From Macrostomum lignano (taxonomy: Eukaryota), in the NCBI GenBank assembly GCA_002269645.1, contig NIVC01001650.1, forward strand, positions 1-64,000: DNA of 64,000 nucleotides, in the 5' to 3' direction. Below, in pieces: positions 44,535 through 63,450 of the stretch (its first letter is position 1; every line of letters begins with the position of its first letter). Under the pieces are notes generated by a model. That model searched no databases. It was given only the letters and a program-made list of their open reading frames with translations, and was not told where the DNA came from. The translations under genes were made by a program, and so were the position numbers.

Positions 44535-46465
44535 GACTGTGTAACGAAATGTGCAGCAGAAATGATAAAATGGAATCATTCATCGAACCAATGAGTGGAG
44601 ATGTGCCACTTTAATCATTTTAGGCACAGGAAATGTACGCAGGATAATAAAATTAGCATAGCTCGTAAAATCCAAATCAATAGAGCCATCAGAAAGGCAA
44701 GTCATACCAAAATATGAACATTGGGTCTGCCTTCTATCAAAAACAATTGCACGTTTTGTGCTGAAAAATGAAAACCTCTATTCTCGGTAATGTATTTTTA
44801 GTAAAACATGCCCCCTAAAATTTGTCCAAGAAACATACTTTTCCGTTTTTCTACTTAAGTAGTCCTTGGGCCAAATAAGTTGTAAAATCAGTAAAGTATT
44901 CAAATGCTTAACATGTATTTTGAACGAGCGGCTGATGGCAGATCTGCGTGCTGCATCCATGTACAGGTTAAGTAGAAGGCTCAACATGTACACCTGCAAT
45001 TTCAGGTAAATTTCAATGAACTTGCCGTGGAATTAAGCTGGAAATTATAATTTTGCGGATATGAATTCTCGGTTCTTTAGCACTTAATAGATTACTCATG
45101 GTAAATTCCAATTATTTTAGTTTAAATCTCTTTAGAGAAAGATGAAATGTGACTGGATTGGTTGCTCTCTACCAGTGTCTTTAACTGTGTCCATATGTGT
45201 GCCTACTGAAGGTACAGTAGTAAAATTTGCATATGCAAAGAAAAATTTTCGTCAGAGCGTAAATTTTAATGGGAAGAGATAAGAATGTACATCAGTTTGT
45301 GCATGCCTGTCTGTCAAATTAGACTTGAGTAGTCAGATTGGAACTTACTAGAAATTGCCGCGATATTGCAGCCCTCGCCGCCGAGCCAAGACTGGGGAAT
45401 GAAAATGCCAACGGTATATACAGATGATTTGGCTGCGCTGTGAACAAATAGACTAATCATTTTGCGAACTTAATTAATTCTATAAGATTAAAATAGCTTA
45501 ACTCGAGTGTCAAAGTAGCATTTAAAGGAGGCTGACATCAAGCCCGAGTAGGGACATTTTTCAAGCGCTGGAACCCACTACTGTAACACTTAAACGGATT
45601 CATTTTGTCGTGCTGTGTACATGCTGCTGCTGCTGCTGCTGTACAATTAATGAACTTTTGTGCAAAACATTTCTTCTTTTTGCCTAAGCACTAACCCAGC
45701 TGCTTCTGCATTGTCACTGTGTAGTAGAATTCTTCCTTCTAAACCTAAAATGGAGGAACAGATTTTTGTGAATATCCTTCAAGGGCCTCTCGAAGACCTC
45801 AGATTCGAAGAAAATAGTCAAGGTAACTAGTTTTATTTAAATGAACTGTACGATAAAAGCGGCCGGTAGTGTGGTTGTACAGTTGCATAAGTGTTCGACA
45901 ATTCTTTTCAAAAGTTTGAGTAGTTCATAATCTATATTGGGCACAGCTGAGCTTGCAGTCGCCCTGACAACGCTTCGTCTTATTTGCAGCTGCGATCTAC
46001 CATATAGACAAAATCTCTACACGGACACTAACAATAATGCTAGCGAAGCAGCCCGAGTGATATTGGTAAACTATGCAGACCTTACTATCCATTCATTTCA
46101 GCCCGGTAGCAGCGGCCAGTGCTGGTTTTACAAGTGGGCCTGCATCGCCATGTTTACTGTCTACACTCTATCGAAGTTGCTGACCAGAAAACAACAACAG
46201 CAGCCGCATCTGTACAATCGGCAGCGATTGTCCCAATTGTTGGGTCTGCTGCGTAGGGGCCCTCTTTGGTTGTGGATGAAATTACTAACCCTTAACGAAG
46301 GAGTTCTGCTGCTTCTGCTGCTGGCTGCCTATTTACTGGGCTGGATCGTGACTCAGCTGCTGGTCATATGAACAAATTATTTCTTGAGCTCTTTTTTTGG
46401 CGTAGTCTAAACCAACGTTGAAATTAATCAATAGTTTCTATAGTACGCAAGCGGAATTAGGGGAC

Positions 46466-46633
46466 TAGAGGCGGGCGGAGATTGTTTAGCTAGGCAGGAA
46501 GTGGGGTTGGGTTAACAAGTGTCATACGCCAGCCAATCAGATACAACTGATGGGTAGAGGCGGGGATTGTTTAGCTAGGCAGGGAGTGGGGTTGGGTTAA
46601 CAAGTGTCATACGCCAGCCAATCAGATGCAATT
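46466..46633 (+). promoter_or_regulatory. Tandem duplication (89-bp period, ~2 copies) of a GC-box plus CCAAT-box module
   Basis: GGGCGG/GGCGGGG and AGCCAATCAG in both copies, ~1.1 kb upstream of the MYLIP ATG. Confidence 0.45.
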
Positions 46634-47755
46634 AAGCTGAATTAAATGGTACAATGCTTTCCTCTCTATGAAATGCACTTTTCCGCGTGACTGGTAAAAG
46701 CAACTTCATAATTGAAAGAAATTGCTGGACTAGCTGCCATTCTTTCTTGTTTTTCTCGTTTTTACTTTTGCTGTACACGGCCTATATTTGCTGAATCTAT
46801 TTCTGTTAACTATTAAATAGCATTGTGTGCTTTTGTTCGCCGCCTGGACTCCCGCCTTTCAATCATTTGTACAGTGTCAGCAGCCTTACAACTCTTATTT
46901 GTTGTTCTGTTCGATTGTGGACCAAGCTGTGGCTTATTGCCTCATGCATTAATCTCTCGTACTATTGCTATGCTTTACTTATAAGTATTCTTTGAATAAA
47001 CTGTGGATTCTAAGAGAGAAGATTTACCAAATCGTGGAATGAATTTCAGAGATAACAATTATTTTCTAACCAAGTTTTGGTGAAAATCAGTTGAGCCGTT
47101 TTTTAATCAATCCCATAGCCAGTCGATTGCAACTACATTTTTAGTACTTTAGCTAGTATTTATGAGCATGCAATCTAGAGTTGCGCTTACGTATATGAAA
47201 TTATCTGTTAGAAACAGATAATGTAAGATGATTCGAAAGTCTAGGTTTTTCCTTGAATGAGATTGTTTGGTTGGAACTTGGAACATTGGAATGTGGAGTA
47301 GCAGTCAGTAGTATCTATCTGGTCCATTTGGATTTCCATGCCCATAGCGTACTTACAGGCACTGCTATTAAGGGTCACGCGACACGCGAATGGAAAATGG
47401 CGCATAGTGCTAAAAATAGAATCGAGGCAACCCCATTCTCCCGGCTTTGAGTGCGCCACGCGCATGCTGCGTGGCCCTGCACGAATTGACCTTGACAAGA
47501 AACCATTCCTCACTCGCCAAATTTCGGGTTACCACAGTAGGAGAGGATGGAAAAGGAAGCCCCATGCGCATGTGGCGTGTGCGATTTCAGATTCTCACCC
47601 CCGGAATTCCTCTTATATAAAACAGGATTGCGCACACAGCATACGCCATACAAAAGCGTCTGTTCAAACAAACAGTGAGTGTGTTGATTTGCCTTCATGA
47701 AACAATCGCAATTGTCCTAACAATTAACTATTTTAAAGATTTTTTTCAAAATAAA

Positions 47756-50700
47756 ATGAGTTGCCTCGTTCACTACGAAGTGACTCTGCCAGACGGGCGA
47801 GTTCGGGTTGTCTCGTTCGACAAAAGTGCCAGTGGATACGACTGCATTAAATTGGTGAGCAAAATTTTGCAGTTTGATTTGGCGACCTGAGCAGTGACTG
47901 AGTTTCTTGCTTTCTGTGAGTTAAGCAGTAGTCAAAAAATTCAGTTGGTACAAAAAATCTTAGCAAAAAGTGAAAACATACACAGCTAAGCAGGGATTTC
48001 GGTAAAAAAATCTGACAATGTCACAATGCTCACTGACTTAGATAAAAATAAACATTCGAATATTCGGGTGCGACGTCTAATTTTAGTTTCTGGCATACAG
48101 AAGAGGTCTTGTAGCTAAGAGCAACAATGAAAGACACCCATTTTGCTATGCCCGTCTGAAAATTCGCTTATGTCTACTGATAACTACCAGCATATTGTTG
48201 GCATATTACTAGAGAATTTAAATCTATTTAGCTGAACCCGCCCGCTCCCAACATGTTTGCAGTTGTGCCGCAGTGAGGGCGTATTCGAGGAGGCGGACTA
48301 TTTCGGCTTGACCTATCCAGGCAGCCGAGGCGAGGAGCTCTGGGTCAACAGCCGCAATCGGCTCGCCAAGCAGGTGCCCCGGCCCGGCCGCTGCCAGTTG
48401 CGCCTGGCTGTCAGGTTCTTCGTGCAGCCCCATATGCTGGTGGAAGAGGCGACTCGGTGAGCCAGTCTCTGGGGTGGGCATCGTAGGTTGAGGTCAAGGC
48501 CTAGCCTAAGGAATTCATATAGTAATTCTGGGAGTCCAAGGTCACCCAGCCGCGAGTCCAAGGTCACCCAGCAGGGAGTCCAAGATCACCCAGCAGCGAG
48601 TTCAAGGTCACCCTGTCAAGGTCACTCAGGGAAGTCACGATCACTCTGGTAGCAGGTCACAGGTCAAGGTCATTCTGGAGGCCTATTCGTTCTGGGTTTT
48701 TAGGGTTATCAGGGGTCATTATGGGAGGTCAAGGTTATTTTAAGATTTAGAAAATCATTTTGAATGTCCTCACAGGCAGCTATTTCACTTGGAGGCTCTC
48801 AGGCGCGCTGGCCACCAGCACCCAACCGAAGCTGCTCGCACGACAACCCTAGAACAGGTGGCAAACGGAGCCGCTTACGGCTGTCACTTTCATCCCGTCA
48901 AAGACTGTCAGCGACGAAAACTATTAATTGGAGTTGACTGTGATTCGGTCCTCCTTTGCCGCGCAGATGGCGGAGTTCTGCTGAGGTTGGTGCCAGACTT
49001 TTTTATTCCTGGCCTATCAATATATGCTATATCTGCTACTTTCAATGGGCGTCGGTTTGGCGTTTTTTGGCTAAATTTGTGTTCTGAGTAAAATTTGGCT
49101 TCGGCTGGCTGGTGTGCAAAGTTATTAATCTCTTTCCTTTTTCCTTTCTGACTTTCTTATTGGCTCATGTATACTTTTATCGACCATTAACAGCCCCCAG
49201 CCCTTAGCTCAACCCCCGACCGCGTCTTCTACACGCGAACCCTCTACCCCCCACAGCCCTCCTCTCCCATGTACATTTCCAGCGGGGCGCTAGCCAATGT
49301 ACATTACAGATTGATAACAAGTTGTTTACGGGCTGGGCTGCAAGCGTTCCGCTTTAACAATGGACGTAACTTTTTAGTGGCAGATTTTAGTGGCGCATTT
49401 ATATCCGTATGCTCAGAATGTAATGCATTTTGCAAGAAATTAGCCAGTATAGAAACGCAAGTAACAACAATAATTTATAAATTTAACCAACTATTAAACA
49501 GGTACGCGTTTCCCAGAGTTCAGAAGGTGACCAGAAGCGGCAGGCTGATTTACCTGTTGCTAAGTAATCAAGACGGAATTGCTAGGGAATTTGGTTTCCG
49601 TCTGGCCAGCGGCAAAGCTGCCGAAGGCCTGTACCGCTGCGTGACGGAGACGCACAGTTTCTTCCGCAGCGGCAGCGTGCGCTCCCGGCTGGCGATGCAG
49701 CGGCGGCGGCGGCACCCGCTGCGGAATTCGCCGAGGGTCGGCGACCTTAAGGCCAGTTTGGCGGCGCTCATCAAAGGCGGCGCCGTGGGCAGTGATGCCG
49801 TCAACAGCGAGGCAAAATCCGCTGAGGACTGCTGTGAGCATTGCGCTGCTTGGGGTCTGGGGTTGGTCTGTTTTGTTAGGGTCAGTGGCGTCAGTGGGGT
49901 CAGTGGGGTCAGTGGGATCAGTGGGGTCAGTGGGGTCAGTAGGCTCAGTAGGGCAGTGGCGTCAGTGGGGTCAGTGGGGTCTGGGGTCAGTGGGGTCAGT
50001 GGGATCAGTGGGGTCAGTGGGGTCAGTAGGCTCAGTAGGGCAGTGGCGTCAGTGGGGTCAGTGGGGTCTGGGGTCAGTAGGCTCAGTGGGGTCAGTGGGG
50101 TCAGTGGGGTCAGTAGGCTCAGTAGGGCAGTGCCGTCAGTGGGGTCAGTAGGCTCAGTGGGGTCAGTGGGGTCAGTAGGCTCAGTGGGGTCAGTAGGCTC
50201 AGTGGGGTCAGTGGGGTCAGTGGGCTCAGTGGGGTCAGTGGGGTCAGTAGGCTCAGTGGGGTCAGTAGGCGTTAGTGGGGTCAATAGGCTCAGTAGGGTC
50301 AGTGGGGTCAGTTAGGGTCAGTTGGGGTCCCTTGGGTCAGTGGGGTCAGTTGGGTCAGTTGGGGTCCGTAGAGTCTGTGGGGTCAGTTGGAGTCCGTAGG
50401 GTCTGTGGGGTCAGTTGGGTCAGTGGGTTCTCAGCAGTGCCCTTCCACGCGAGGCCGGCCCCGAACCCGCAGGCCCATGCAGCTGCTACGCTTTCGACGT
50501 TCGCTGCACAGCCAAAGAGGTGCACGACGCGGCCAGGCGCCGTCAGTTCCGTGACCTGCGCAGCGCCGGCGGCGCACTGAAGCCGGCAGTTGCTGCTGCT
50601 GCTACGACCGCAGAGCCGGCCGCCTGTCCTGCCGGGCCAGACGAGGTGAGATTGATGTTCTCTTGCACTACCTGTAATTAGCATGATAATGTAACTTCAT

Positions 50701-50930
50701 AGAATAATGTAAGGTAACTTTAATTTCCGCAGAGCATTAATGCGTTAGCTAGTCGTTTGGAGTGTCTGCTTCAAGAGCGGACCTGCTGCCTGTGCTCCGA
50801 CCAGCCAATCAGTATTGTGCTGGTGCCGTGCAGCCACATGCTGAGCTGCCAGGACTGCTCGGCAAAGCTGCTCGAGTGCCCGATTTGCCGGGGACAAATC
50901 GCTGGCAAGCAGACTGTTTTGCTTCCTTAA
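47756..50930 (+). CDS. MYLIP: MYLIP/IDOL (Drosophila dnr1) FERM-RING E3 ubiquitin ligase, 401 aa, 6 exons
   Basis: Exons 47756-47854, 48263-48456, 48776-48985, 49502-49833, 50473-50645, 50733-50930. FERM F1 (DYFGLTYPGSRGEELWVNSRNR...RFFVQPH), F3 (KLLIGV...AAEGLYRCVTETHSFFR), IDOL-specific YAFDVRCTAKEVHDAARR, C-terminal C3HC4 RING CCLC...PCSHMLSCQDCSAKLLECPICR. Confidence 0.92.
49880..50430. repeat. 9-bp G-rich repeat (GGGGTCAGT), MYLIP intron 4
   Basis: Tandem copies visible. Confidence 0.93.
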
Positions 50931-51374
50931 ATTAGTTGAGTTTACAAAATTCCCTCGTTTTTCTACTGTAAGTAAGCGAGTAGAGACCTGTCTTCCTTCG
51001 AATATTTAGTCTGCAATTTGGCACTTTGCAAAGCAATGCAGACAACTGGAATCTCGAATTGTTTTGTCTTTTTATTTTTTATGCAAAATTATGCTACGTT
51101 TTATGATAGAATGCGAAAAGTATTTCTGCACAGTTTGAAGTGATATTTTTATAACTCTAGACTTTGCGGCACATTGCCTGTTCAATGCAAATTGTACGAG
51201 TGAAGAGCGCTTTTCTCAGTTCTTGCTTGCAATTTTCATTTTTTGCTTTAATAAATTTAAAACGCTATAAAACACGAGTATTTGGCAGTGCAATCAGTTC
51301 GTGAGTGATTTTCTACACGTCTAATTTTTTTGTAAAAATGAAGTTCAGTTGGACGGGAGAGTGAGCGAATGGTC

Positions 51375-52085
51375 AAGCTCGGTGATCTGGTAGGCAAGGG
51401 CAGTGATCTGGTAGATAAGGGCAATGATCTGGTGGACAAAGGCCGTTAGCTGGTGGACAAAGGCCGTTAGCTGGTGGACAAAGGCAGTCAACTAGTGGAC
51501 AAGGGCAGTGATCTGGGGGACAAGGGCAGTCAGCTAGTGGGCAAGGGCAGTGATCTGGGGGACAAGGGCAGTCAGCTAGTGGGCAAGGGCAGTGATCTGG
51601 TGGGCAAGGGCAGTGAGCTGGTGGGCAAGGGCAGTGATCTGGGGGCAAGGGCAGTGAGCTGGTGGGCAAGGGCAGTGATCTGGGGGACAAGGGCAGTTAT
51701 CTGGGGGACAAGGGCAGTCAGCTAGTGGACAAGGGCAGTGATCTGGGGGACAAGGGCAGTCAGCTAGTGGGCAAGGGCAGTGAGCTGGTGGGCAAGAACA
51801 GTGAGCTGGTGGGCAAGGGCAGTGATCTGGGGGACAAGGGCAGTCAGCTAGTGGGCAAGGGCAGTGAGCTGGTGGGCAAGAACAGTGAGCTGGTGGGCAA
51901 GGGCAGTGATCTGGGGGACAAGGGCAGTCAGCTAGTGGGCAAGGGCAGTGAGCTGGTGGGCAAGGGCAGTGAGCTGGTGGGCAAGAACAGTGAGCTGGTG
52001 GGCAAGGGCAGTGATCTGGGGGCAAGGGCAGTGAGCTGGTGGGCAAGGGCAGTCAGCTAGAGCTAGTGAGCAAGGGCAGTGAGCA
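51375..52085. repeat. 21-bp minisatellite (GGGCAAGGGCAGTGATCTGGT)
   Basis: 7-aa period in the translation. Confidence 0.95.
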
Positions 52086-52974
52086 GATTGTTACAATAAA
52101 CTTGCATGAGCCAGCTGATCTCAAACTGAACCCGATCTTCCCATCCTTGATGGGCCGGTCATCGGCTAGCTGGTCACGCAATCCCCCCATTTTTTCGATT
52201 CCCCTTTTCTAACACCTTACAGTACAGCTTTCCCCATGCGATGCAACTGCTAGCTGGGTTTCAGAGGTGAGCAGGCAATGTATCGAAAGCAAGGCGCTGA
52301 GAGTGCAGCTGTGCCAGCCGGGCCGGAGTGTCGGGTTACGGTTCCTCGCGTCCTGCCGGCTAGACCTTCTGCTTATACCATAAGCCTGCGCTGGGCTCAA
52401 ACGGTTCTCCAAACAGTAGCTGTGTCACGCTCAGAGAGCGAGCTCGGCTTGTGTGAAGCAGCAGCTTTTAGGAGAACAGAGCAAATGCAAGGCTAGAAAA
52501 TAAGTTCAAGCATTTTAGCCACCGTTTTGATTTAGCGTGTCAGGGCTATTTATTTATTTGTTTATTGCCTACGAAATTATTGCCTCCATTTTAATGCGCC
52601 ATTTTAAAGGGAACAGAAAAGTCAGAAACAAAATAATAATTTACACAATGGTAGATTGACTGGACTGCAAAGCCAGGCAAAATGCAAGCAAAATTGCAGC
52701 CTTCTAAAGATACAAAGTACTCGTACGATATCCAGGGGCCGTCCCAGTAGCGTCGAAGCTTAGAAAACGAGGATGACAAAACAATCTAGCTAGAAGCGAA
52801 GACAACGTCACAGCCTTGGTTGCTAGTGACGTCATAGTCAAATGCAAGATAGTGACGGGATTCTCCAGGTGAGGGAATGAAGCTACAGCCAATGGGGAAA
52901 AGGATGCATCAAAGCGTCAATCGAGGGTACCGTAGCGTCATCGAGCAGAGTCTAATTAGCTGCACAAATCCGGG

Positions 52975-55404
52975 CTAAACATCGGTTGTCAAGGTGACAG
53001 CCGCGGAACCACCGAGAACGTGACCTTGTAACAGCGGCTGCGTCCGCGGTGGCAGCGGTGGCGGCAGCAGCAGCTCGCGTTCCACCAGCAGCCGCGTCGC
53101 TGGCAGGCGGCCGCCACCTCGGCGCTGGTCGCCGGCACCGCGCCAGGAGTCCGGGCGATGCAGCGGGCAGCGGGCGCCGGCGATGGCCGGGTCGCTTCCG
53201 CTCGGAGCCCCGCAGCCTGCGCCCTCATCTTCGCTGCTGAAATCGTCACTGTCATCCTCCTGGCCGAGCCGGCCGGCCACGGGGAAATTGGCGCTGCCAC
53301 CAGCCGGATTGGCGTCGGCACAGACGCCACCGCGCAGCAGAAAAAGCGCCGATGCCGACGCCGACGCCGGATCGCGAGCGTACCGAGGCAGTGCCGTCAT
53401 GGAGTCGTACGGAGAGCCACAACCGCCCGGCGGTACATAATCGGGCGAGACGCAGCCGCCAGCCGAGCCCCACAGCATCGGCAGCTGCCCCTGCATTGCT
53501 GCCATCGGCTGCGTCGACGGTGGCTGCAGCGGCGGCGATGTTGGCGGCGCCTTGTCTGGTGTGTCCTGACTGCGCCGGTAGCGCAGCACGGCGAATACCA
53601 CGGCCACCAGGGCCAGCAGGAACAGCAGCACGGAGCCGATACCGGCCCAGAGAATCACCGACTGGTCGACAATCTGCTGTTCCCTGACCACCACCGAGTT
53701 GGTGGTGTTGGGCCGCTGCACGCACTTCCTGAGGCGGAACTCGGCAGGAGGCTCGGGTTCTCCTTGTGCACCGAAACAGCGCAGGCCGCGAATCCCGTCG
53801 CCGAGGAGTCGCCGCTGCCGCTCCCAGGCGTCCGGCTCGAGCTGGGAGCAGCTGCAGCGGACGGTGACGGAAGCGCCAAGGTCCACACGTGGCGGCGTGG
53901 CGCGGCCGGCGGACGCCAGATTGAGCAGGCTGGGCGGTAGGCTGAGCAGCGGGTTGCCGCTGAGGTTCAGCCAGTGCAGGCTGGTGAAGGCGGCCAGCGG
54001 GGCGAAATCCGTAGCCGCAGTGATGCGGTTTCTGCTCAGGTCGATCCGCTGCACAAGACTGGCGTTGGCGAGCTTGCCGGCGAATTTGAGGCTGGATATC
54101 CGGTTGTCGGCCAGCAGCAGATTGTAGCGCACCGGGTGCACGCTGGCTGGAAGGCGCCGCGGCAAAGCTGAAAGCCCGGCGCCGCGGCATTTCAGTGTCA
54201 GCTCGGACGGCATGACGCGCTCGGTGCAGCCGCAGCCGGTCGGACAGTCGTCGGTGTGCTCGCAGCGGAGATCCGTATCGGCCAAGCTCGTGATGTTTTT
54301 CCTGCTGACATAGCCACCACCTGGGAGGCTGGTGGGGTCGCAGCGCAGGCGGAGCCAGTAAGCCAGCGACAGCGCGTTCCGCCTGGAAAACTCGTCCGGA
54401 TCCCGGTGAACCCGGCGCAGGAATGACCACGCGGACAGCAGGCGGCAGTCGCAGGTGACCGTCGAGTCGGTGTTGTCGATGTACAAAAACGACCGGAAGG
54501 CGTCCCGGTAGAGCTTCAGCGCGTTTACCACGGCGTCAGTGGCCGCGTCAGAGTCGGAGTCCAGGCTGGGCACCGGGAGGCCCCAGAGGGTGCGGCCGTC
54601 GGCAAAGGCCTCCGGGCCGATGCGGTTTTGCACGAGCTGCACGGACAGGCGGGCGTAGTAGTTCGGGTCCTGGGTGCGCCGCCAGTTCCGCTCGGCGGCG
54701 ATCGCGGCCACCTTGTCGGGCGTCCAGCGCCATCGGAGCCGGTCGGTGACGCGGGACACCCGGTTGTAACTCAGGTCGATGTCCTGCAGGCTGGGCAGGC
54801 GCACCAGTGAGATGTCCACCTGCTTGATGCGGCAGCGGCTGGCCAGGATCGTCTTGAGCGCCGCGCTGCTGCGGCCTGACTGAGACTGCAGCGCCTCGCT
54901 GAGGTAGAGCGACTCCAGCTGGCGGTTGTCGGACAGGTCCAGCTGCTCGAGGCCCGGCAGGCGGAGGAACTGCGAGATGTCGGCCTCGCGAAGGCGGTTG
55001 GCCCGCAGGCTGAGCCAGCGCAGGCGGGACAGGCAGCCGGGCCTGTCGGACAGCTGGCCGGCAGGATAGCGGAATTCGGCTATCAAATTCTCGGCCAAGT
55101 CCAGGCCGGACAGCTGATCGAACTGGCAGAATCCGGACAGGGGAGCCTCGGACAGTTGGGCGCGGCGCATGGTGAAGTTGAGCACCCGGTCGGGCTGGTA
55201 GGCCGTCTCGTGCAGGTGGCAGCGCTCGGGGAAATTGTTGCTGGGCCGGCACTCGTGGGCGGTGAGCATTCGGTAGTCGCCGCCGCCCGAGCTTGACCGA
55301 ATATTTTTCACCTGGACGCTGTGGCAAAATCGCCAGGGACAGCCGACTGCCACAGGTGGCAGCAGCAACAGCAGAAGCAGCGGCAGCAGCGTCTCCGGCC
55401 TCAT
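52975..55404 (-). CDS. Intronless LRR type-I transmembrane receptor with Toll-like multi-cysteine-cluster ectodomain, no TIR, 809 aa
   Basis: Single open frame. ATG at 55404 gives signal peptide MRPETLLPLLLLLLLPPVAVG; ~6 LRRs (LDLAEN, LSLRAN, LDLSDN, LASRC, IDLSYN, LVQN); LRRCT (CDC...LRC...LRC) directly followed by LRRNT (CPTGCGC...C); 3 LRRs (LLADN, IDLSRN, LNLSGN); second CSC...C...C cluster; TM VILWAGIGSVLLFLLALVAVVFAVL (~53584-53658); ~200 aa low-complexity tail. Confidence 0.88.
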   Translation of the reverse strand: MRPETLLPLLLLLLLPPVAVGCPWRFCHSVQVKNIRSSSGGGDYRMLTAHECRPSNNFPERCHLHETAYQPDRVLNFTMRRAQLSEAPLSGFCQFDQLSGLDLAENLIAEFRYPAGQLSDRPGCLSRLRWLSLRANRLREADISQFLRLPGLEQLDLSDNRQLESLYLSEALQSQSGRSSAALKTILASRCRIKQVDISLVRLPSLQDIDLSYNRVSRVTDRLRWRWTPDKVAAIAAERNWRRTQDPNYYARLSVQLVQNRIGPEAFADGRTLWGLPVPSLDSDSDAATDAVVNALKLYRDAFRSFLYIDNTDSTVTCDCRLLSAWSFLRRVHRDPDEFSRRNALSLAYWLRLRCDPTSLPGGGYVSRKNITSLADTDLRCEHTDDCPTGCGCTERVMPSELTLKCRGAGLSALPRRLPASVHPVRYNLLLADNRISSLKFAGKLANASLVQRIDLSRNRITAATDFAPLAAFTSLHWLNLSGNPLLSLPPSLLNLASAGRATPPRVDLGASVTVRCSCSQLEPDAWERQRRLLGDGIRGLRCFGAQGEPEPPAEFRLRKCVQRPNTTNSVVVREQQIVDQSVILWAGIGSVLLFLLALVAVVFAVLRYRRSQDTPDKAPPTSPPLQPPSTQPMAAMQGQLPMLWGSAGGCVSPDYVPPGGCGSPYDSMTALPRYARDPASASASALFLLRGGVCADANPAGGSANFPVAGRLGQEDDSDDFSSEDEGAGCGAPSGSDPAIAGARCPLHRPDSWRGAGDQRRGGGRLPATRLLVERELLLPPPLPPRTQPLLQGHVLGGSAAVTLTTDV

Positions 55405-56499
55405 CGCCAGCTCAGTCAGTCGGTCACGCACACTGGAGCTGCTCCAGTTAAGTTGCGCGCATGGCTTCAAGAAATCGAGAAGATGAAAAGAAGTTTGTTG
55501 GTTGCTTGGCACGGCTCAGCAAACAGTAACGGGAGAGGCTGGGGATGCAATCGAAGCAGTCCTGGCAGGAGTTGCAATGGGCGGCGTTGCCTTGGCGGAG
55601 CGCAGAGCAGAAGTCAGATTATACTGGCAGCGGCAAGGGAGTTTGCAGCCGGGCTCTGACGAATATTGCAGGGAATCGCTGAGCAAATTTTCGCATTACC
55701 TCTTCTTATCTTCTCTCTCTCTCCTTAGCCCTGCTCAATCGGGGCGAATTGCTGTGTGTTTGTCTCCAGCCAACCAGAGGGCAGGTGGGCCAAGCAGGGG
55801 TGGGCGGGGCAGGTGGCTCGCAGCTGCATACAGAGATTAGGCGGGACGGAGGGCTCCGCTTGGCAGCAGGTGAGACACAGCGCCCTGTGGAGCCGTGCCA
55901 GCGCCTCACTAACCCCCCTCCGCCCCCGTACACTGCCGAACTTGTCGGCCACTTTGAAACTTGAGGCACTTCGCTCATCTGTGCTTTCTCAATGCTCACG
56001 CACCCACTTGTGGGCGTAAAGTTAGAACTCAATTTTTGCGGTCCTGTTTTTTAGCAAAGCCGAGCTTGAGCTCGACTGGCAGGCAGTCCCGGCGCGCCAC
56101 CTACGCATTTTTAGCGCTGATGTCACGCGGCGTGACTATTAATAGAAACAAATTTTATTGCTTTTTATTTCGCTCTCATGACGAAACACCAAGCCGGACG
56201 CTTCCATTCAGATAAAAGCAGAGTTTGAAGCCTCTCCGTCCAGGCTGCATGACTGCTGTTAAATTGCTTCTCGTTATTGTAGTTTGCAAATTATGAAATA
56301 TGACTTCAACTTCAAGCTCCGAAACGGCTGCTGAGATGGGAATGATGAGGCAAAGAATGATTATATCAATCCTGTTATACTAATGAGCGATGTGTTAAGC
56401 TGTCTTTGCTGCCAAATATGCTAAGTGCCACCGAAAGCTGTCGTATGGCGCTTAGGGTGTCGGTGGCAGCAAAGCTATCAGATGTCAGGGAGGCGTCAG

Positions 56500-57390
56500 A
56501 TGGAGCAGGGAGGCGCCAAAGGGGCAGGAAGGCGCCAAATGGGATAGGGGGTGCCAAATGGGACAGAGAAGCGCCAAATAGGATAGGGAGGCGCCAAATG
56601 GGACAGAGAGGCGCCAAATAGGACAGAGAAGCGCCAAATGGGACAGAGAGGCGTCAAGTGGGACAGGCAGGGGCCAAATAGGACAGAGAGGCGCCAAATG
56701 GGACAGAGAGGCGCCAAATAGGATAGGGAGGTGCCAAATAGGATAGGGAGGCGCCAAATGGGATAGAAAGGCGCCAAATGAGACAGGAAGGCGCCAAATG
56801 GGACAGATAGGCGCCAAATAGGATAGGGAGGCGCCAAATGGGACAGAGAGGCGCCAAATGGGACAGAGAGGCGTCAAATAGGATAGGGAGGCGCCAACTG
56901 GGACAGAGAGGCGCCAAATGGGACAGATAGGCGCCAAATAGGATAGGGAGGCGCCAAATGGGACAGAGAGGCGCCAAATGGGACAGAGAGGCGTCAAATA
57001 GGATAGGGAGGCGCCAACTGGGACAGAGAGGCGCCAAATGGGACAGAGAGGCGTCAAATAGGATAGGGAGGCGCCAACTGGGACAGAGAGGCGCCAAATG
57101 GGACAGATAGGCGCCAAATAGGATAGGGAGGCGCCAAATGGGACAGAGAGGCGCCAAATGGGACAGAGAGGCGCCAAATAGGATAGGGAGGCGCCAACTG
57201 GGACAGAGAGGCGCCAAATGGGACAGATAGGCGCCAAATAGGATAGGGAGGCGCCAAATGGGACAGAAAGGCGCCAAATGGGACAGGAAGGCGTCAAATG
57301 GGACAGGAAGGCGCCAAATAGGATAGGGAGGCGCCAAATGGGACAGAAAGGCGCCAAATGGGACAGGAAGGCGTCAAATGGGACAGGGAG
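56500..57390. repeat. 20-bp minisatellite (GGCGCCAAATGGGACAGAGA) with higher-order pattern
   Basis: Tandem copies visible. Confidence 0.96.
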
Positions 57391-57922
57391 GCGCCCAAAG
57401 ATGTTTGGGGCGCCACATCCAGTCGGGGCGGAGCTTGGCGACAGCAGCGGTTAGATCTGTGCCGAAGCGAGGGGCAGTGCGTCTGCCGCTCACAGGCGTT
57501 TAGCAGGGCTCGTCTCTGACTAGGACTGCATTGTAAACATCTGCATGGTCCTCAGGGTCATCTGCACCACATTTTTACAGCAAAGAAAGTGCTGCGGCTA
57601 ATGCACACGGGGTAGTAGTGCATGGCGGAGCCATCAATTATTAAGCGCTGATGGCGAAAAGTCGCAATTGGGCCGCCCATTAAGTAGAATTATCAGGATT
57701 GGCTCGAAACTACAAGTAGAAATTCTGCTCGAGTAAAAGCCAGCCGTTTTTTGGTTACTTTCCATTGGGTTGCGGGATCGGGATGCGGGATCGGGATGCT
57801 GCATGCGGGATCGGGGGTCGCCATCACAAACCCGAAAAATCACAACTCCGAAAGCACTTCCCATCACAAACCCGAAATATCATAACTTCGAAAACCAAAA
57901 TAGTGTTGGACATTGCTAGAAC

Positions 57923-59760
57923 TTTCGGAGTTATGATATTTCGGGCTTGTGATATTTCGGGTTTATGATATTTCGGGTTTATGATATTTCGGGTTTATGA
58001 TATTTCGGGTTTATGATATTTCGGGTTTATGATATTTCGGGTTTATAATATTTCGGGTTTATGATATTTCGGGTTTATGATATTTCGGGTTTATGATATT
58101 TCGGGTTTATGATATTTCGGGTTTATGATATTTCGGGTTTATGATATTTCGGGTTTATGATATTTCGGGTTTATGATATTTCGGGTTTATGATATTTCGG
58201 GTTTATGATATTTCGGGTTTATGATATTTCGGGTTTGTGATATTTCGGGTTTATGATATTTCGGGTTTATGATATTTCGGGTTTATGATATTTCAGGTTT
58301 ATGATATTTCAGGTTTATGATATTTCGGGTTTATGATATTTCAGGTTTATGATATTTCGGGTTTATGATATTTCGGGTTTATGATATTTCGGGTTTATGA
58401 TATTTCGGGTTTATGATATTTCGGGTTTATAATATTTCGGGTTTATGATATTTCGGGTTTATGATATTTCGGGCTTGTGATATTTCGGGTTTATGATATT
58501 TCGGGTTTATGATATTTCGGGCTTGTGATATTTCGGGTTTATGATATTTCGGGTTTATGATATTTCGGGTTTATGATATTTCGGGTTTATGATATTTCGG
58601 GTTTATGATATTTCGGGTTTATGATATTTCGGGTTTATGATATTTCGGGTTTATGATATTTCGGGTTTATGATATTTCGGGTTTATGATATTTCGGGTTT
58701 ATGATATTTCGGGTTTATGATATTTCGGGTTTATGATATTTCCGGTTTATGATATTTCGGGTTTATGATATTTCGGGTTTATGATATTTCGGGTTTATGA
58801 TATTTCGGGTTTATGATATTTCGGGTTTATGATATTTCGGGTTTATGATATTTCGGGTTTATGATATTTCGGGTTTATGATATTTCGGGTTTATGATATT
58901 TCGGGTTTATGATATTTCGGGTTTATGATATTTCGGGTTTGTGATATTTCGGGTTTATGATATTTCGGGTTTATGATATTTCGGGTTTATGATATTTCAG
59001 GTTTATGATATTTCAGGTTTATGATATTTCGGGTTTATGATATTTCAGGTTTATGATATTTCGGGTTTATGATATTTCGGGTTTATGATATTTCGGGTTT
59101 ATGATATTTCGGGTTTATGATATTTCGGGTTTATGATATTTCGGGTTTATGATATTTCGGGTTTATGATATTTCGGGTTTATGATATTTCGGGTTTATGA
59201 TATTTCGGGTTTATGATATTTCGGGTTTATGATATTTCGGGTTTATGATATTTCGGGTTTATGATATTTCGGGTTTATGATATTTCGGGTTTGTGATATT
59301 TCGGGTTTATGATATTTCGGGTTTATGATATTTCGGGTTTATGATATTTCAGGTTTATGATATTTCGGGTTTATGATATTTCGGGTTTATGATATTTCGG
59401 GTTTATGATATTTCGGGTTTATGATATTTCGGGTTTATGATATTTCGGGTTTATGATATTTCGGGTTTATGATATTTCGGGTTTATGATATTTCGGGTTT
59501 ATGATATTTCGGGTTTATGATATTTCGGGTTTGTGATATTTCGGGTTTATGATATTTCGGGTTTATGATATTTCGGGTTTATGATATTTCAGGTTTATGA
59601 TATTTCGGGTTTATGATATTTCGGGTTTATGATATTTCGGGTTTATGATATTTCGGGTTTATGATATTTCGGGTTTATGATATTTCGGGTTTATGATATT
59701 TCGGGTTTATGATATTTCGGGTTTATGATATTTCGGGTTTATGATATTTCGGGTTTATGA
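57923..59760. repeat. 16-bp minisatellite (ATGATATTTCGGGTTT), ~115 copies
   Basis: Highly homogeneous array forming one arm of an inverted repeat. Confidence 0.98.
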
Positions 59761-59859
59761 TGGAAAGCGCTTTTCCGAGTTGTGATTTTTCGCGTTTGTG
59801 ATGCCCCCGGGGATGGGGACGTTGGATCGGAAAGCGAAATCGAGATCGGGATCCCAATC

Positions 59860-60045
59860 GGGGTGTGGGATCGGGATGTGGGATTGAGATGCGGGACCGG
59901 GATGCGGGGTCGGGATGTGGGATCGGGATGTGGGATCGGGATGTGGGATCGGGATGTGGGATTGGGATGTGGGATCGGGATGCGGGATCGGGATGCGGGA
60001 TCGGGATGTGGGATTGGGATGTGGGATCGGGATGCGGGATCAGGA
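59860..60045. repeat. 13-bp minisatellite (GGGATCGGGATGT)
   Basis: Related units also at 57773-57815. Confidence 0.93.
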
Positions 60046-60329
60046 ACGGAATCCTGGATGTCAAACCTGGATGTCTATTTTTTTTCAGATCGCAAACCTG
60101 TGTAGCTGAATAATCTTTTTGATTCGAATTTCTGTTTTTCAGTTTTAAAGAAATTTGAGTTTTTCTGCCTCAGCTTTCGTGACTGCTCTTTCGTATAGCG
60201 GAGAGGCTGCTCTTCTAGCCTGCAAAATATTCCCCTTTTTTGCACGATTTCACTCAGCGATTTTGTCTTCTACTTCTTTTCTAATCTCGTACCAGCGTCT
60301 ACCTTGCCTTCTAGCCTAAAAATACTGTT

Positions 60330-60715
60330 CACTTTAATCCCCACCCCAATAAACTCGAATCCCCACCCCGATAAACTCGAATCCCCACCCCAATAAACTC
60401 AAATCCCCACCCCAATAGACTTGAATCCCCACCCCAATAGACTCGAATCCCCACCCCAATAGACTTGAATTCCCACCCCAATAAACTCGAATCCCCACCC
60501 CAATAGACTTGAATCCCCACCCCGATAGACTTGAATCCCCACCCCAATAAACTCGAATCCCCACCCCGATAAACTCAAATCCCCACCCCAATAGACTTGA
60601 ATCCCCACCCCAATAGACTCGAATCCCCACCCCAATAGACTTGAATCCCCACCCCAATAAACTTGAATCCCCACCCCAATAAACTCGAATCCCCACCCCA
60701 ATAAACTCGAATCCC
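60330..60715. repeat. 22-bp minisatellite (AATCCCCACCCCAATAAACTCG)
   Basis: Period 22. Confidence 0.95.
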
Positions 60716-61984
60716 AATCTCAATCAGGTGATTTTGATCCCCCACGCCCCCATTTATTCTTTCCTGGCGCACAAGGAGCAAAATATTTTCATAAGAGCAG
60801 ATCAATAAATCTCCATGTCAGAACAGCCGAGAATTCAACCGGATGCTGGCCAGATGCAGTTACTGTAAACAATGTCCCCTATATTATAATTTTTCAGCCC
60901 TTTCACAAACAGCAGCCGAAAATGACCCAGCCCTCACCTGATGGTGTCGAAAGAGAAGCAAGAAAATCGAAAACTGCAGCAGCAGCAAAACTAATGACAA
61001 GAAAGGCAGACTTGAGTAAGGCCTGATGAAGCTGTCTTGTATTCGGAAGCTGGATCGGAGACGGGGGTCTACAGTTGCATGTGAATTCGGTTCTGCCCGC
61101 ATCAAGTCATTCGCTGACACACAGACAGGGCGGGGCGATGCGGAAGCTGAATAAGTTGATGAAGCAGCCTTGAGCTGAGGGCGAGAGCGCGGCCAAGGCG
61201 TACTTGAACTGAAATCTCTGGACTGGCAAACTGCACCCCTGAAACCTTCGTTTCTTACAAGAGAACACCGGAAGCAGTTCGCTTTAGCTTTGTCTGCAGC
61301 ACAGTGGAAATTCAGAGATCTGACTCACTGGCCAACTTCAGAGCAGGATTGATCAACAAAATTTAAAGTTCAACCACAGTTCAACCGCTTTTAGCGGAAC
61401 ATCCTTTGGTCTTCACTGAACAGAAATTCACAAATCATTTCTCAGTTTTAGTAGCAGAGCGCGGAAATCGACCAGGGGCTTGTCGCGTGACGTAGATGCC
61501 AACCCCGAAGGTACAAATAGCTCGTAATTATATTCGCTGGACAGTCGGGGACGCTGTACAAGCCTGCACATCCGTGAGCGTGTGCGGAGCCTGACTTCAG
61601 AGTAAAAAAGACAGTGAAATTGAGTTGCGAGTCCGGATGTCTCGTCTTAAAACTCCTCGGCCGGGCTGTAGACCCGCACGGATCTGCATGGCCCCGATCT
61701 CTTTCGCAGGCAGCCTCGAGTCCGCGCGTCCTTCTCCCCAGCTATTCCGCGCTCATTTTTTCGCAGATTAGCCAAATTTAAGCTGCCTGCACTTCATCAA
61801 GGTCTATTCCCAGATACAGCCAGTCTCCCCCCAATCATCTGCGAGCGACTTCCTCCGTCTTCTTTCAAGGCAGATTATTAAAAAATATATCTTTTTTCTT
61901 AAATTGCTCTGCTAGCGGAAATGTCTCAATACGTACGAGTAAGGAGCACCCGGCTGTCACGATACTCGCCAATTTCTAAGCAAA

Positions 61985-62690: not shown

Positions 62691-62825
62691 AGCTTTACGG
62701 GGTTCTGTAAGGTTCATAAACCTGAAAACCTCTTAGACCAATCGTCTATGATTAACACCGCTGAATATGAGCTGGCCAAGTATCTGGATTCCCCCATCAA
62801 GCCTCTCATTCCGTCTTACTTGCCA
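62691..62825 (+). mobile_element. Penelope-like RT fragment in opposite orientation
   Basis: GFCKVHKPE, PLRPIV (offset frame) and MINTAEYELAKYLDSPIKPLIP match the PLE RT motif KVHKP..PLRPIVS.I.SP.Y.LAKYL..IL.PL. Confidence 0.75.
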
Positions 62826-63119
62826 ATCTTACTTGCCAAGCGAGCAACTTTACCTGAGTTTTACTTTCAAATCTAAGCAAAGAAATTTAATAACTCAGGT
62901 AAGAATCACCACATTTTCGCGTTCACCTTTAGAGACCGTCGTGAGGCTACGCGCGAAAGAGCAAGTGAATGTAAGAGCAACTCACTCTACTGACAGTAAA
63001 TGAATCAGGGTAATTTTAGAAAAAAACTTTGCAAACAATCAAATTTAAGAAATGTCGGGTATAGACCAAAAAAGCAATATCCGCAAGAGCGCTGTGGTCA
63101 CCATGGCGCAACGCTTTCG

Positions 63120-63450
63120 GTCGATTGACTGCGGTCAAGCGGACAATTGACTGCGGTCAAGCGGACAAAATGACTGCGGACAATTGACTGCGGTCAAGCG
63201 GACAAAATGACTGCCGACCGACAATTGACTGCCAACAAAATGACTGCCGACAATTTGACTGCGGCGATTTGATTGCGGACAAAATGACTGCCGACAATTT
63301 GACTGCCGACAAAATGACTGCCGACAATTTGACTGCCGACAAAATGACTGCCGACAATTTGACTGCCGACAAAATGACTGCCGACAATTTGACTGCCGAC
63401 AAAATGACTGCCGACAAAATGACTGCCGACAATTTGACTGCCGACAAAAT
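63120..63450. repeat. 15-bp minisatellite (GACTGCCGACAAAAT/GACTGCCGACAATTT)
   Basis: Alternating variants give a 30-bp period. Confidence 0.94.

What the first reader, a model, noticed from the sequence alone, without database searches (positions are those of the whole stretch)
53584..55404. Toll-type (multi-cysteine-cluster) ectodomain on a receptor with no TIR domain
Seen: SP, ~6 LRRs, LRRCT abutting LRRNT (~54460-54225), 3 LRRs, LRRCT, TM, all in one exon. Known: the LRRCT-LRRNT-3LRR-LRRCT juxtamembrane module is the hallmark of protostome-type Toll; canonical TLRs are reported missing in Platyhelminthes; Hydra uses separate LRR and TIR proteins. Inference: if the host is a flatworm, this may be a relic or split Toll receptor that lost or exchanged its TIR. 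Lack of introns suggests retroposition or a fast-evolving family.
Basis: partly seen in the sequence, partly recalled or inferred. Interest (0 to 1): 0.7.

Follow-up and report, generated by a model that had tools for sequence, protein, structure and literature searches.

The report
Flatworm Toll-like receptor without TIR domain
This is an intact, intron-free gene of the flatworm Macrostomum lignano for a membrane receptor whose outer part looks like that of insect and mollusc Toll receptors, but whose inner part lacks the TIR signalling domain and ends in a short motif that typically docks onto scaffold proteins. So in an animal group said to have lost all Toll receptors, a Toll-type sensor or adhesion module survives with different wiring.

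Summary
One minus-strand ORF (ATG 55404, stop 52975-52977, 809 aa) encodes, in order:
- a signal peptide and a cysteine cap
- about 6 LRRs and a family-specific insert
- an LRRCT abutting an LRRNT (C381-x5-C387)
- 3 LRRs, a second LRRCT, a TM helix
- a 202-aa disordered tail.

It is the annotated "hypothetical protein BOX15_Mlig003707g4" of Macrostomum lignano, so the host is a flatworm.

There is no TIR in the protein, in any frame of the 64-kb window, or around three related loci. The C-terminus is conserved in all four family members, so it is genuine.

An exhaustive search of 1.84 billion proteins finds only four family members: three M. lignano paralogue groups and one from an unknown organism.

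The nearest outside relatives of the ectodomain are TIR-bearing multi-cysteine-cluster Toll/TLRs. Profile-profile score is 374 against short spiralian TLRs, 348 against long Tolls, 171 against Slit and 142 against chaoptin. The top fold matches are fly Toll, mosquito Toll5A and worm TOL-1. A neighbour-joining tree cannot say whether the family is nested in TLRs or sister to them.

The tail keeps a PPLPPR motif and a terminal T-[D/N]-[V/L] PDZ ligand, which suggests scaffold coupling.

Retroposition is not needed, because related TLR genes are also single-exon. This is a new variant of the known "LRR-only TLR-like" kind and is moderately interesting.

The parts
52975..55404 (-). Complete single-exon CDS (809 aa plus stop at 52975-52977). 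It matches M. lignano 'hypothetical protein BOX15_Mlig003707g4'.
   Evidence: ORF listing. The best local alignment to P0001 is 100% identical. Against P0001's own gene (L002) the CDS differs by 2 amino-acid changes, 1 synonymous change and a 2-aa indel. The NCBI model is single-exon.
55342..55404 (-). Signal peptide, aa 1-21 (MRPETLLPLLLLLLLPPVAVG)
   Evidence: Hydrophobic window at aa 4-24. AF2 helix at aa 3-14. The cleavage site is inferred.
55186..55341 (-). N-terminal cysteine cap, aa 22-73 (C22, C27, C52, C62)
   Evidence: All four cysteines are invariant in the four family members. AF2 predicts a beta hairpin at aa 24-54.
54733..55185 (-). First LRR block, about 6 repeats, aa 74-224
   Evidence: Pfam LRR_8 and LRR_4. 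LRR cores at aa 98, 128, 152, 183 and 206. AF2 pLDDT is mostly 84-98 here, with short dips to about 60-70.
54490..54732 (-). Family-specific conserved insert between LRR6 and the first LRRCT, aa 225-305 (W225, W227, Y249, LWG 273-275)
   Evidence: Invariant residues across the four members. AF2 helices at aa 229-245 and 286-304. Only partly alignable to TLRs.
54262..54489 (-). First LRRCT, aa 306-381 (C318, C320, C355, C381)
   Evidence: Aligned to the first LRRCT of Drosophila Toll and of TLR profiles. The cysteines are invariant or nearly so over 26 sequences.
54133..54246 (-). Internal LRRNT, aa 387-424 (CPTGCGC...C406), 5 residues after the last LRRCT cysteine
   Evidence: Pfam LRRNT at aa 386-419, E 0.012, below the cut-off. 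PDB profile hits to the LRRNTs of Slit2, a VLR-like protein and 5T4. Junction string CEHTDDCPTGCGC.
53890..54132 (-). Second LRR block, 3 repeats, aa 425-505
   Evidence: LRR cores at aa 451 and 476 and the YNLLLADNRISSL repeat at about aa 427, read from the sequence. Pfam LRR_1 at aa 475-496. AF2 pLDDT is mostly 86-97.
53722..53889 (-). Membrane-proximal LRRCT, aa 506-561 (C517, C519, C543, C561)
   Evidence: hhalign to TLR profiles runs through the last cysteine. The cysteines are invariant or nearly so.
53584..53658 (-). Transmembrane helix, aa 583-607, followed by RYRR
   Evidence: Kyte-Doolittle peak of 3.06. AF2 helix at aa 581-606.
52978..53583 (-). Cytoplasmic tail, aa 608-809. It is rich in Pro, Gly, Ala and Ser, is predicted disordered, and has no known domain.
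   Evidence: No Pfam family. pLDDT below 35. Composition. hhalign to a TIR profile gives probability 0.1%.
53218..53262 (-). Acidic serine cluster, about aa 715-729 (EDDSDDFSSEDEG). D721-F722-S723-S724 is invariant between the window gene and Mlig000711; the other two members keep only part of it.
   Evidence: Alignments. A kinase-site role is inferred only.
53044..53064 (-). Polyproline motif LPPPLPPR, aa 781-787. It fits the class II SH3 ligand form PxxPxR.
   Evidence: P781-P783, P785 and P786 are invariant in all four members, within an otherwise divergent tail. SH3 binding is inferred from the motif.
52978..52986 (-). C-terminal T-D-V, a class I PDZ-ligand form ([S/T]-x-[V/L] at the carboxyl end)
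   Evidence: TDV, TNV, TDV and TDL end the four family members. T807 is invariant. Binding is inferred.
52561..52566 (-). Candidate polyadenylation signal AATAAA, about 410 nt after the stop. No genomic poly(A) tract follows.
   Evidence: Read directly from the sequence. Function is inferred.

Best explanation
The locus is a functional, single-exon gene of Macrostomum lignano. It belongs to a small family: three M. lignano paralogue groups and one relative in an unidentified organism.

The product is a type I membrane protein. Its ectodomain is a short multi-cysteine-cluster (protostome-type) Toll/TLR ectodomain. Its cytoplasmic part is not a TIR domain. It is a 200-aa disordered tail with a conserved PxxPxR polyproline motif and a conserved C-terminal T-x-V/L PDZ ligand.

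Shown:
- the architecture
- the absence of a TIR
- the genuine C-terminus
- Toll/TLR ectodomains as the closest relatives.

Inferred:
- The protein descends from, or is sister to, the spiralian short TLRs. It fits the class that TLR surveys call 'LRR-only TLR-like'.
- It acts at the cell surface as a ligand- or partner-binding (adhesion or recognition) receptor.
- Its output and localisation go through PDZ and SH3 scaffold proteins (Dlg/PSD-95-type, from my own knowledge of -TDV ligands) rather than through MyD88-type TIR-TIR signalling.
For: Gene and constraint:
- Intact ORF identical in extent to the NCBI model.
- The paralogue Mlig000711 is also a single-exon gene.
- Against a 97-98% identical second copy, the CDS has 3 mismatches in 2,424 aligned bases. 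The immediate flanks have 15 in 1,996.
- Paralogue dN/dS is about 0.3-0.5.

No TIR:
- Pfam on the protein, on two relatives and on the tail alone.
- tblastn with a Tollo TIR.
- A TIR HMM against all six frames of the window and of L001-L003: best E 1.2.
- Tail profile against TIR profile: probability 0.1%.
- The terminal T-[D/N]-[V/L] and PPPLPP are conserved in all four members, down to 29% identity, so the stop is the real end.

Toll-type ectodomain:
- The best PDB sequence hit is Drosophila Toll, aligned across LRRCT-LRRNT-LRR (E 3e-8).
- In the exhaustive search, 17 of the 26 top-150 hits whose alignment spans the junction carry a TIR. The best module scores (45-58 bits) belong mostly to TLRs, with 'Protein toll' of Cacopsylla highest. 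Two Pfam-confirmed Slits score 32 and 24 bits.
- A four-member module profile gives 37 full-length module matches. 26 are in TIR proteins and none is in a Slit.
- hhalign score is 374 (E 6e-46, 417 colinear columns from the first LRR block to the last cysteine) against short TLRs of Owenia, Argopecten, Potamilus and Saccostrea. It is 348 against long Tolls, 171 against Slit and 142 against chaoptin.
- AF2 model: pLDDT 82, pTM 0.75. Foldseek ranks 1-6 and 8 are Toll, Toll5A and TOL-1 (E 3e-11 to 2e-7); generic LRR proteins start at about 1e-7.
Against: - All similarity to TLRs is low (about 20-23% identity).
- LRR proteins match each other easily, and the control profiles differ in depth (Slit 2 sequences, TLR 11-12), which inflates the score gap somewhat.
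- The PDB holds multi-block LRRCT-LRRNT ectodomains only for Tolls. The AF2 alignment contained TLRs, so the fold ranking is not independent. TM-scores are low (0.22-0.30).
- The neighbour-joining tree places the family basal to the TLR modules and not nested. Family monophyly has only 16% bootstrap support because of one long branch.
- The scaffold-coupling mechanism rests only on short linear motifs.
- No expression or interaction data were found.
Confidence: 0.55

Rival explanations
1. Split Toll receptor, as in Hydra. The LRR-only protein senses microbial or endogenous ligands and signals by pairing in the membrane with a separate TM-TIR protein. This would restore a Toll pathway in an animal without canonical TLRs.
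For: No TLR was found in the M. lignano genome, and TLR-like LRR-only or TIR-only proteins are said to be present in flatworms (PMC8609888). Planarians have about 20 TIR proteins, none with LRRs, and keep MyD88, TRAF6, TAK1 and p38 (PMC7958881). The Hydra precedent is cited in both papers. The ectodomain here is Toll-type.
Against: No partner could be looked for with these tools. The 200-aa tail has its own conserved PDZ and SH3-type motifs, which a mere ligand-binding subunit would not need. No TIR gene lies near any of the four loci.
Confidence: 0.2
2. An ordinary extracellular-LRR adhesion protein (Slit-, Slitrk- or LRRTM-like class) with no specific ancestry with Toll. The LRRCT-LRRNT-3LRR-LRRCT layout would then be convergent, or an ancient shared module.
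For: LRRNT-LRR profile hits to Slit2, the amphioxus VLR-like protein and 5T4 score as well as or better than Toll when only single domains are compared. Slit has a similar C-x5-CPxxCxC string, although there the first cysteine is an extra one in the inter-domain linker. The full-length word-indexed search returns chaoptin, artichoke and chondroadherin-like proteins first. The tree does not nest the family in TLRs. A PDZ-ligand tail is typical of synaptic LRR adhesion proteins (my own knowledge).
Against: When the whole module or the whole ectodomain is compared, TLRs score about twice as high as Slit or chaoptin. No Slit covers the full module. No non-Toll family comes closer.
Confidence: 0.2
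3. A decaying relic or retrocopy with no function.
For: The gene is intronless. It sits between tandem-repeat arrays in a repeat-dominated window. The tail is fast-evolving and dN/dS is 0.3-0.5.
Against: The 809-codon ORF is intact in two near-identical copies of the locus, and the three other family members are intact too. All structural cysteines and the terminal motifs are conserved down to 29% identity. The CDS is less diverged than its flanks. There is no poly(A) tract. Related TLR genes are also single-exon.
Confidence: 0.03
4. A canonical TLR whose TIR exon was missed.
For: None, beyond the general possibility of mis-annotation.
Against: A TIR HMM finds nothing in six frames of 64 kb, nor in the flanks of the three related loci. 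The conserved C-terminal motif is directly followed by a stop in all four members.
Confidence: 0.02

Closest known systems
Multi-cysteine-cluster (mcc, 'protostome-type') Toll/TLRs. These include the short (~700 aa) spiralian TLRs (Owenia fusiformis CAH1777296, Argopecten irradians XP_069136858, Saccostrea 'protein toll-like', Potamilus) and Drosophila Toll, Aedes Toll5A and C. elegans TOL-1.
   Same: The ectodomain order is the same: LRR block, LRRCT, LRRNT, short LRR block, LRRCT, TM. Twelve cap cysteines are conserved. There is a colinear profile match over 417 columns. The CDS is single-exon. These are the top sequence and fold matches in the PDB.
   Different: There is no TIR domain. The tail is 202 aa, disordered, with PPLPPR and a T-D-V end. 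A conserved 80-aa insert precedes the first LRRCT. Identity is only about 20-23%.
'LRR-only TLR-like' proteins: the Hydra LRR proteins that pair with HyTRR TIR proteins, and the unlisted TLR-like proteins of Platyhelminthes mentioned in PMC8609888.
   Same: A transmembrane LRR protein of Toll type without a TIR, in an animal lacking canonical TLRs.
   Different: No TIR partner is known here. The long tail has its own docking motifs. The Hydra sequences were not compared directly.
TIR-less 'protein toll-like' of chelicerates (Limulus XP_013777121, Tachypleus XP_076331624, Centruroides XP_067122184), and by analogy vertebrate RP105/CD180 (my own knowledge).
   Same: A full Toll module followed by a TM helix and no TIR.
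   Different: Their tails are 10-45 aa with no PDZ-type end. They coexist with canonical TLRs in the same genomes. RP105 is of the single-cysteine-cluster type.
Slit (and vertebrate Slitrk)
   Same: Tandem LRR domains each capped by an LRRNT and an LRRCT. A similar C-x5-CPxxCxC string occurs.
   Different: Slit is secreted, with four LRR domains plus EGF and laminin-G domains. The profile score is half that of TLRs, and the second LRRCT is not matched. No Slit covers the full module.
Synaptic LRR adhesion proteins with PDZ-ligand tails (LRRTM, NGL/LRRC4, SALM/LRFN). This is a functional analogy from my own knowledge.
   Same: A type I LRR ectodomain plus a disordered tail ending in a class I PDZ ligand. 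LRRTM2 and LRRC4 appear among the weaker PDB sequence hits.
   Different: They have a single LRR block with one NT/CT pair, and some have Ig or FN3 domains. No specific sequence relationship was found.

Membership tests
Canonical Toll-like receptor (definition used in PMC8609888: LRR + TM + TIR) | Intracellular TIR domain | tested here: not met
   Pfam finds no TIR. TIR HMM on six frames of the window and related loci: best E 1.2. Tail versus TIR hhalign: probability 0.1%.
Canonical Toll-like receptor | At least one extracellular LRR and one TM helix | tested here: met
   LRR_8 E 1.9e-14. TM at aa 583-607.
mcc / P-type Toll ectodomain | More than one LRRCT, with an internal LRRNT following the first LRRCT | tested here: met
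   Cysteine clusters at 318-381, 387-406 and 517-561. They align column for column to TLR LRRCT-LRRNT-LRRCT.
mcc / P-type Toll ectodomain | Closer to Toll/TLR ectodomains than to other LRR families | tested here: met
   hhalign scores: 374 and 348 (TLRs) against 171 (Slit) and 142 (chaoptin). 26 of 37 full-module hits carry a TIR. Foldseek ranks 1-6 and 8 are Toll, Toll5A and TOL-1.
mcc / P-type Toll ectodomain | Phylogenetic nesting within the TLR clade | tested here: inconclusive
   Neighbour-joining tree of the module: the family is basal to the TLRs when rooted on Slit. Family monophyly has 16% bootstrap support, and family+Slit form a clade in 10% of replicates.
LRR-only TLR-like protein (PMC8609888, Fig. 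1) | Toll-type LRR ectodomain and TM, lacking a TIR | tested here: met
   See the rows above. Definition.
Hydra-type split receptor (LRR protein + TM-TIR protein) | A TM-TIR partner that associates with the LRR protein | not testable with these tools
   No eukaryotic proteome filter was available. No TIR gene lies within the four loci.
Slit | Four LRR domains followed by EGF repeats, laminin-G and a cystine knot; secreted | tested here: not met
   Only two LRR blocks and a TM helix. No EGF or LamG, whereas the genuine Slits P0041 and P0092 have them.
Class I PDZ-ligand proteins (motif class, not a family) | [S/T]-x-hydrophobic at the free C-terminus | tested here: met
   TDV, TNV, TDV and TDL in the four members. 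Actual PDZ binding was not tested.

The most novel reading that the evidence does not exclude
The family is the surviving descendant of the ancestral spiralian short mcc-TLR in flatworms. The lineage did not lose the gene. It replaced the TIR with a tail that couples to PDZ and SH3 scaffolds. This turned an immune or developmental Toll into a scaffold-anchored recognition or adhesion receptor. That receptor might still meet TIR-only proteins, or Toll ectodomain partners such as latrophilin (compare the TOL-1-LAT-1 structure 8suf). 'TLR loss' in Platyhelminthes would then be domain rewiring, and this gene would be an entry point to how flatworms sense microbes or position cells without TLRs.
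Probability: 0.3. Interest if true: 0.65.

Novelty: new variant of a known kind. Interest (0 to 1): 0.45.

Why it matters
Platyhelminthes are the textbook case of a phylum without Toll-like receptors, and how they sense microbes is an open question (PMC8609888, PMC7958881).

This gene shows that a Toll-type ectodomain persists in a basal free-living flatworm that is an RNAi-tractable regeneration model. It is joined to a different, conserved cytoplasmic output.

It gives a concrete candidate for testing three options:
- flatworms use a split or rewired Toll system
- the Toll ectodomain here serves adhesion or positional functions, as known for some fly Tolls (my own knowledge)
- neither of these.

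The matter is of moderate weight, for three reasons. TIR-less Toll-like proteins exist elsewhere. The family appears restricted to a few sequences. Nothing functional is known.

Tried and rejected
- **Word-indexed protein searches.** They returned only the close paralogue and generic LRR-rich proteins (chaoptin, artichoke, TLR9). They missed two family members that the exhaustive search found. They are therefore not used for ranking relatives.
- **Pfam on raw translations of the 10 kb downstream.** It was replaced by a local TIR HMM on six-frame segments.
- **First AF2 run with 4 sequences.** It was poor (pLDDT 52) and was not used for fold search.
- **Neighbour-joining tree of the module.** It is unresolved. 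The grouping of P0007 with a Strigamia TLR is most likely long-branch attraction.
- **Junction spacing C-x5-CPxxCxC.** It is the modal spacing in TLRs (35 of 69 junctions), but a similar string also occurs in Slit. It is not discriminating.
- **dN/dS between paralogues.** dS is about 1, close to saturation, so this is only weak evidence.
- **Paper searches.** Searches for the gene identifiers and for the run accession DRR639838 gave nothing. The organism of P0007 stays unknown. Its contig is genomic, has AT-rich flanks and a lower GC3.
- **Retroposition.** Rejected as unnecessary.
- **Other long ORFs in the window.** Those that overlap tandem arrays are repeat artefacts.
Full report
**1. What is there**

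The minus strand carries one long ORF, 52975..55512 (845 codons from a GTG). The first ATG is at 55404. It opens with MRPETLLPLLLLLLLPPVAVG, a signal-peptide-like stretch. The ORF ends at the stop at 52975-52977, giving 809 aa.

The word-indexed search shows it is essentially identical to NCBI 'hypothetical protein BOX15_Mlig003707g4 [Macrostomum lignano]' (P0001, 807 aa).

That NCBI gene lies on contig NIVC01003661.1 as a single exon. Its locus is a 97-98% identical second copy of this window. The two CDSs differ by one synonymous change, two non-synonymous changes and a 6-bp indel. That is 3 mismatches in 2,424 aligned bases, against 15 in 1,996 bases of immediate flank.

The rest of the window is mostly tandem-repeat arrays. 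The gene sits between the arrays at 51382-52058 and 56486-57395.

**2. Anatomy**

| Part | Residues | Notes |
|---|---|---|
| Signal peptide | 1-21 | |
| N-terminal cap | 22-73 | four cysteines |
| First LRR block | 74-224 | about six LRRs |
| Conserved insert | 225-305 | family-specific, two predicted helices |
| First LRRCT | to 381 | C318/C320/C355/C381 |
| Linker | 382-386 | five residues |
| LRRNT | from 387 | C387-P-x2-C391-x-C393...C406 |
| Second LRR block | 425-505 | three LRRs |
| Second LRRCT | to 561 | C517/C519/C543/C561 |
| Stalk | 562-582 | about 20 residues, one N-glycosylation site |
| TM helix | 583-607 | followed by RYRR |
| Cytoplasmic tail | 608-809 | 202 aa, rich in Pro, Gly, Ala and Ser |

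All five N-x-S/T sites are extracellular.

Pfam itself recognises only the LRRs and, weakly, the LRRNT (E 0.012). The LRRCT assignments rest on the cysteine pattern and on profile alignments to TLR LRRCTs.

**3. No TIR**

- Pfam finds none in the protein, in two of its relatives, or in the tail alone.
- tblastn with a barnacle Tollo TIR finds nothing in the window.
- A TIR HMM built locally from more than 40 TLR TIR domains was run with filters off. It was searched against all stop-to-stop segments of the six frames of the window and of loci L001-L003. Its best hit has E 1.2.
- A profile of the family tails against the TIR profile gives hhalign probability 0.1%.
- The protein end is conserved (section 4).

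The refutation condition 'a downstream exon supplies a TIR' is therefore not met.

**4. The family**

A profile of the gene and its paralogue was scored against 1.84 billion representative proteins. It gave 803 hits at E<=1e-3 but only four at E<=1e-30:
- Mlig003707 (this gene)
- Mlig000711 (P0002, 814 aa, about 48-52% identity)
- Mlig007983g1-3 (P0006, 867 aa)
- P0007 (779 aa, 29% identity), from a Logan assembly of run DRR639838. Its organism could not be identified.

The next hit drops from 171 to 94 bits.

Mlig003707, Mlig000711 and P0007 have single-exon CDSs. The locus of Mlig007983 was not fetched.

All four members keep every cap cysteine, the insert motifs (W-x-W, LWG) and the TM helix. 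Within an otherwise barely alignable tail they also keep a PPPLPP(R) stretch and the last three residues: TDV, TNV, TDV and TDL. The window gene and Mlig000711 additionally share an acidic D-F-S-S cluster.

Paralogue dN/dS is 0.32-0.54, with dS about 1. The family is constrained but fast-evolving.

**5. Is the ectodomain 'Toll-type'?**

Several partly independent tests agree.

(a) *PDB by sequence.* The best hit is Drosophila Toll (4lxr, E 3e-8). Residues 305-495 align to Toll 525-708, that is, across LRRCT-LRRNT-LRRs. With the module alone, single-domain LRRNT proteins (Slit2, an amphioxus VLR-like protein, 5T4) score as well. Only the Toll structures align across the junction.

(b) *Exhaustive search, top 150 hits.* A local TIR HMM marks 47 of the 146 non-family hits as TIR-bearing.
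- 17 of the 26 hits whose alignment spans the LRRCT-LRRNT junction carry a TIR.
- Only 5 of about 60 hits that match just the N-terminal LRRs carry a TIR.
- The best module scores are 45-58 bits and belong mostly to TIR-bearing proteins. 'Protein toll' of Cacopsylla is highest at 57.9. A few high scorers lack a detectable TIR.
- The two Slits in the list, confirmed by Pfam to have EGF and laminin-G domains, reach 32 and 24 bits.

(c) *Module profile from the four family members (aa 303-563).* It gives 37 non-family matches covering the whole module. 26 are in TIR proteins, and no Slit qualifies. Several of the TIR-less ones are annotated 'protein toll-like' in Limulus, Tachypleus and Centruroides. 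They have a TM helix and a 10-45-aa tail.

(d) *Profile-profile comparison (hhalign).*

| Compared with | Score | E-value | Columns |
|---|---|---|---|
| 12 short (~700 aa) TLRs (Owenia, Argopecten, Potamilus, Saccostrea and others) | 374 | 6e-46 | 417 |
| 11 long Tolls | 348 | 1e-41 | 419 |
| Slit | 171 | 3e-20 | 319 |
| Chaoptin | 142 | 3e-16 | 368 |

The match to the short TLRs is colinear from the first LRR block to the last cysteine. The Slit match does not include the second LRRCT. The control profiles are shallower than the TLR profiles, so the gap is somewhat inflated.

(e) *Conserved cysteines.* In a 26-sequence alignment of the family with 22 TLRs and TLR-like relatives, ten cap cysteines are invariant and two nearly so.

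(f) *Fold search.* An AF2 model of aa 1-607 made with that alignment has pLDDT 82.4 and pTM 0.75. Foldseek against the PDB ranks Toll (4lxr, 4lxs), Aedes Toll5A (7b1b-d) and C. elegans TOL-1 (8suf) first, with E 3e-11 to 2e-7. Generic LRR proteins begin at about 1e-7. TM-scores are low (0.22-0.30), the alignment contained TLRs, and the PDB has no other two-block LRR ectodomains. This is therefore support by rank only.

(g) *Tree.* A neighbour-joining tree of the module rooted on Slit places the family at the base of all TLR modules with poor support. Descent from within the TLRs is therefore not demonstrated.

Net result: no known non-Toll family comes closer, and the layout is that of a short mcc Toll.

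**6. How it probably works**

The protein cannot signal by TIR-TIR contacts. Three things survive in the tail across 29% identity:
- a membrane-proximal basic stop-transfer
- a PxxPxR polyproline segment (class II SH3-ligand form)
- a free C-terminal T-[D/N]-[V/L] (class I PDZ-ligand form).

From my own knowledge, -TDV ends of Shaker-type channels bind Dlg/PSD-95.

The most economical reading is a cell-surface recognition or adhesion receptor that PDZ and SH3 scaffolds localise and couple to the cortex. This resembles vertebrate LRRTM, NGL and SALM proteins (analogy, my own knowledge).

Toll ectodomains are known to bind partners other than Spätzle. The PDB entry 8suf is TOL-1 bound to the latrophilin LAT-1 lectin domain.

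The steps beyond 'motifs are conserved' are inference.

The main rival is the Hydra-style split receptor. The literature makes it attractive: flatworms have TIR-only proteins, MyD88 and TRAF6. It could not be tested here.

**7. Introns and retroposition**

The short TLR genes of Owenia and Argopecten also have single-exon CDSs (2,139 and 2,142 nt for 712 and 713 aa). Intronlessness is therefore shared with the nearest relatives.

The 3' flank has an AATAAA about 410 nt after the stop and no genomic poly(A) run.

Retroposition is not needed. 'Fast-evolving family' is consistent.

**8. Comparison with the literature and novelty**

Orús-Alcalde et al. 2021 (PMC8609888) list 0 TLRs for the M. lignano genome. 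They define proteins lacking the TIR as 'LRR-only TLR-like' and state that such proteins occur in flatworms, 'data not shown'. The gene is deposited only as a hypothetical protein.

I found no paper describing any of the following:
- its mcc-Toll architecture
- its restricted family
- its PDZ/SH3-type tail.

This is a new variant of a known kind. It is not a TLR, because a defining feature was tested and not met. It is not a new category either.

**9. Limits**

- Similarity to TLRs is remote.
- The direction of evolution is unresolved.
- The breadth of the family in flatworms is unknown.
- No expression or functional data are available.

Noticed in passing
window 1-64000 (e.g. 57923-59761, 38473-39910, 14501-15875, 28553-29580): The window is dominated by dozens of micro- and minisatellite arrays, period 4-173 bp (59 TRF rows at score >=200). 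Most long ORFs outside the LRR gene run through these arrays and are artefacts, for example 51576-52046 and 56485-57357.
   Followed up: partly
window ~46474-50437, + strand (ORF 49269-50315): The neighbouring gene is on the opposite strand. In the near-identical contig it is called as a 401-aa product with FERM_N and a C3HC4 RING finger, which looks like a MYLIP/IDOL-type E3 ligase. The window ORF gives a weak FERM_C hit. It also gives a collagen-like hit that comes from a 9-bp tandem array.
   Followed up: partly
L002 (NIVC01003661.1:6138-24561) versus window 45223-64000: A second copy of the whole locus, 97-98% identical and colinear with it, exists in assembly GCA_002269645.1. Cluster P0001 holds 4 member sequences. 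This fits the known large-scale duplication in M. lignano. Array lengths differ between the copies.
   Followed up: partly
P0037/P0278 (Tachypleus, Limulus), P0119 (Centruroides): Chelicerates have 'protein toll-like' genes with a complete Toll juxtamembrane module and a TM helix, but only a 10-45-aa tail and no TIR. These are TIR-less Toll paralogues outside flatworms.
   Followed up: partly
P0011 (Limulus polyphemus XP_022235721, 1955 aa): This protein contains two complete Toll modules (around aa 582-793 and 1441-1650) and one TIR. It is either a tandem-duplicated ectodomain or a fused gene model.
   Followed up: no
L003 (Logan DRR639838_56455, gene 572-2911): This is the only family member outside M. 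lignano. It lies on a 4.9-kb genomic contig with AT-rich flanks. Its GC3 is 0.59, against 0.83 for the window gene. The organism is unknown, and the protein is a singleton in the 5.8-billion-protein collection.
   Followed up: partly
window 54490-54732 (aa 225-305): An 80-aa insert between the last N-terminal LRR and the first LRRCT is strongly conserved in the family (R-x-x-W-x-W, YY-x-RLSV, R-LWG-P). It has no clear counterpart in TLRs. AF2 predicts two helices packed on the solenoid. It could be a family-specific binding surface.
   Followed up: no
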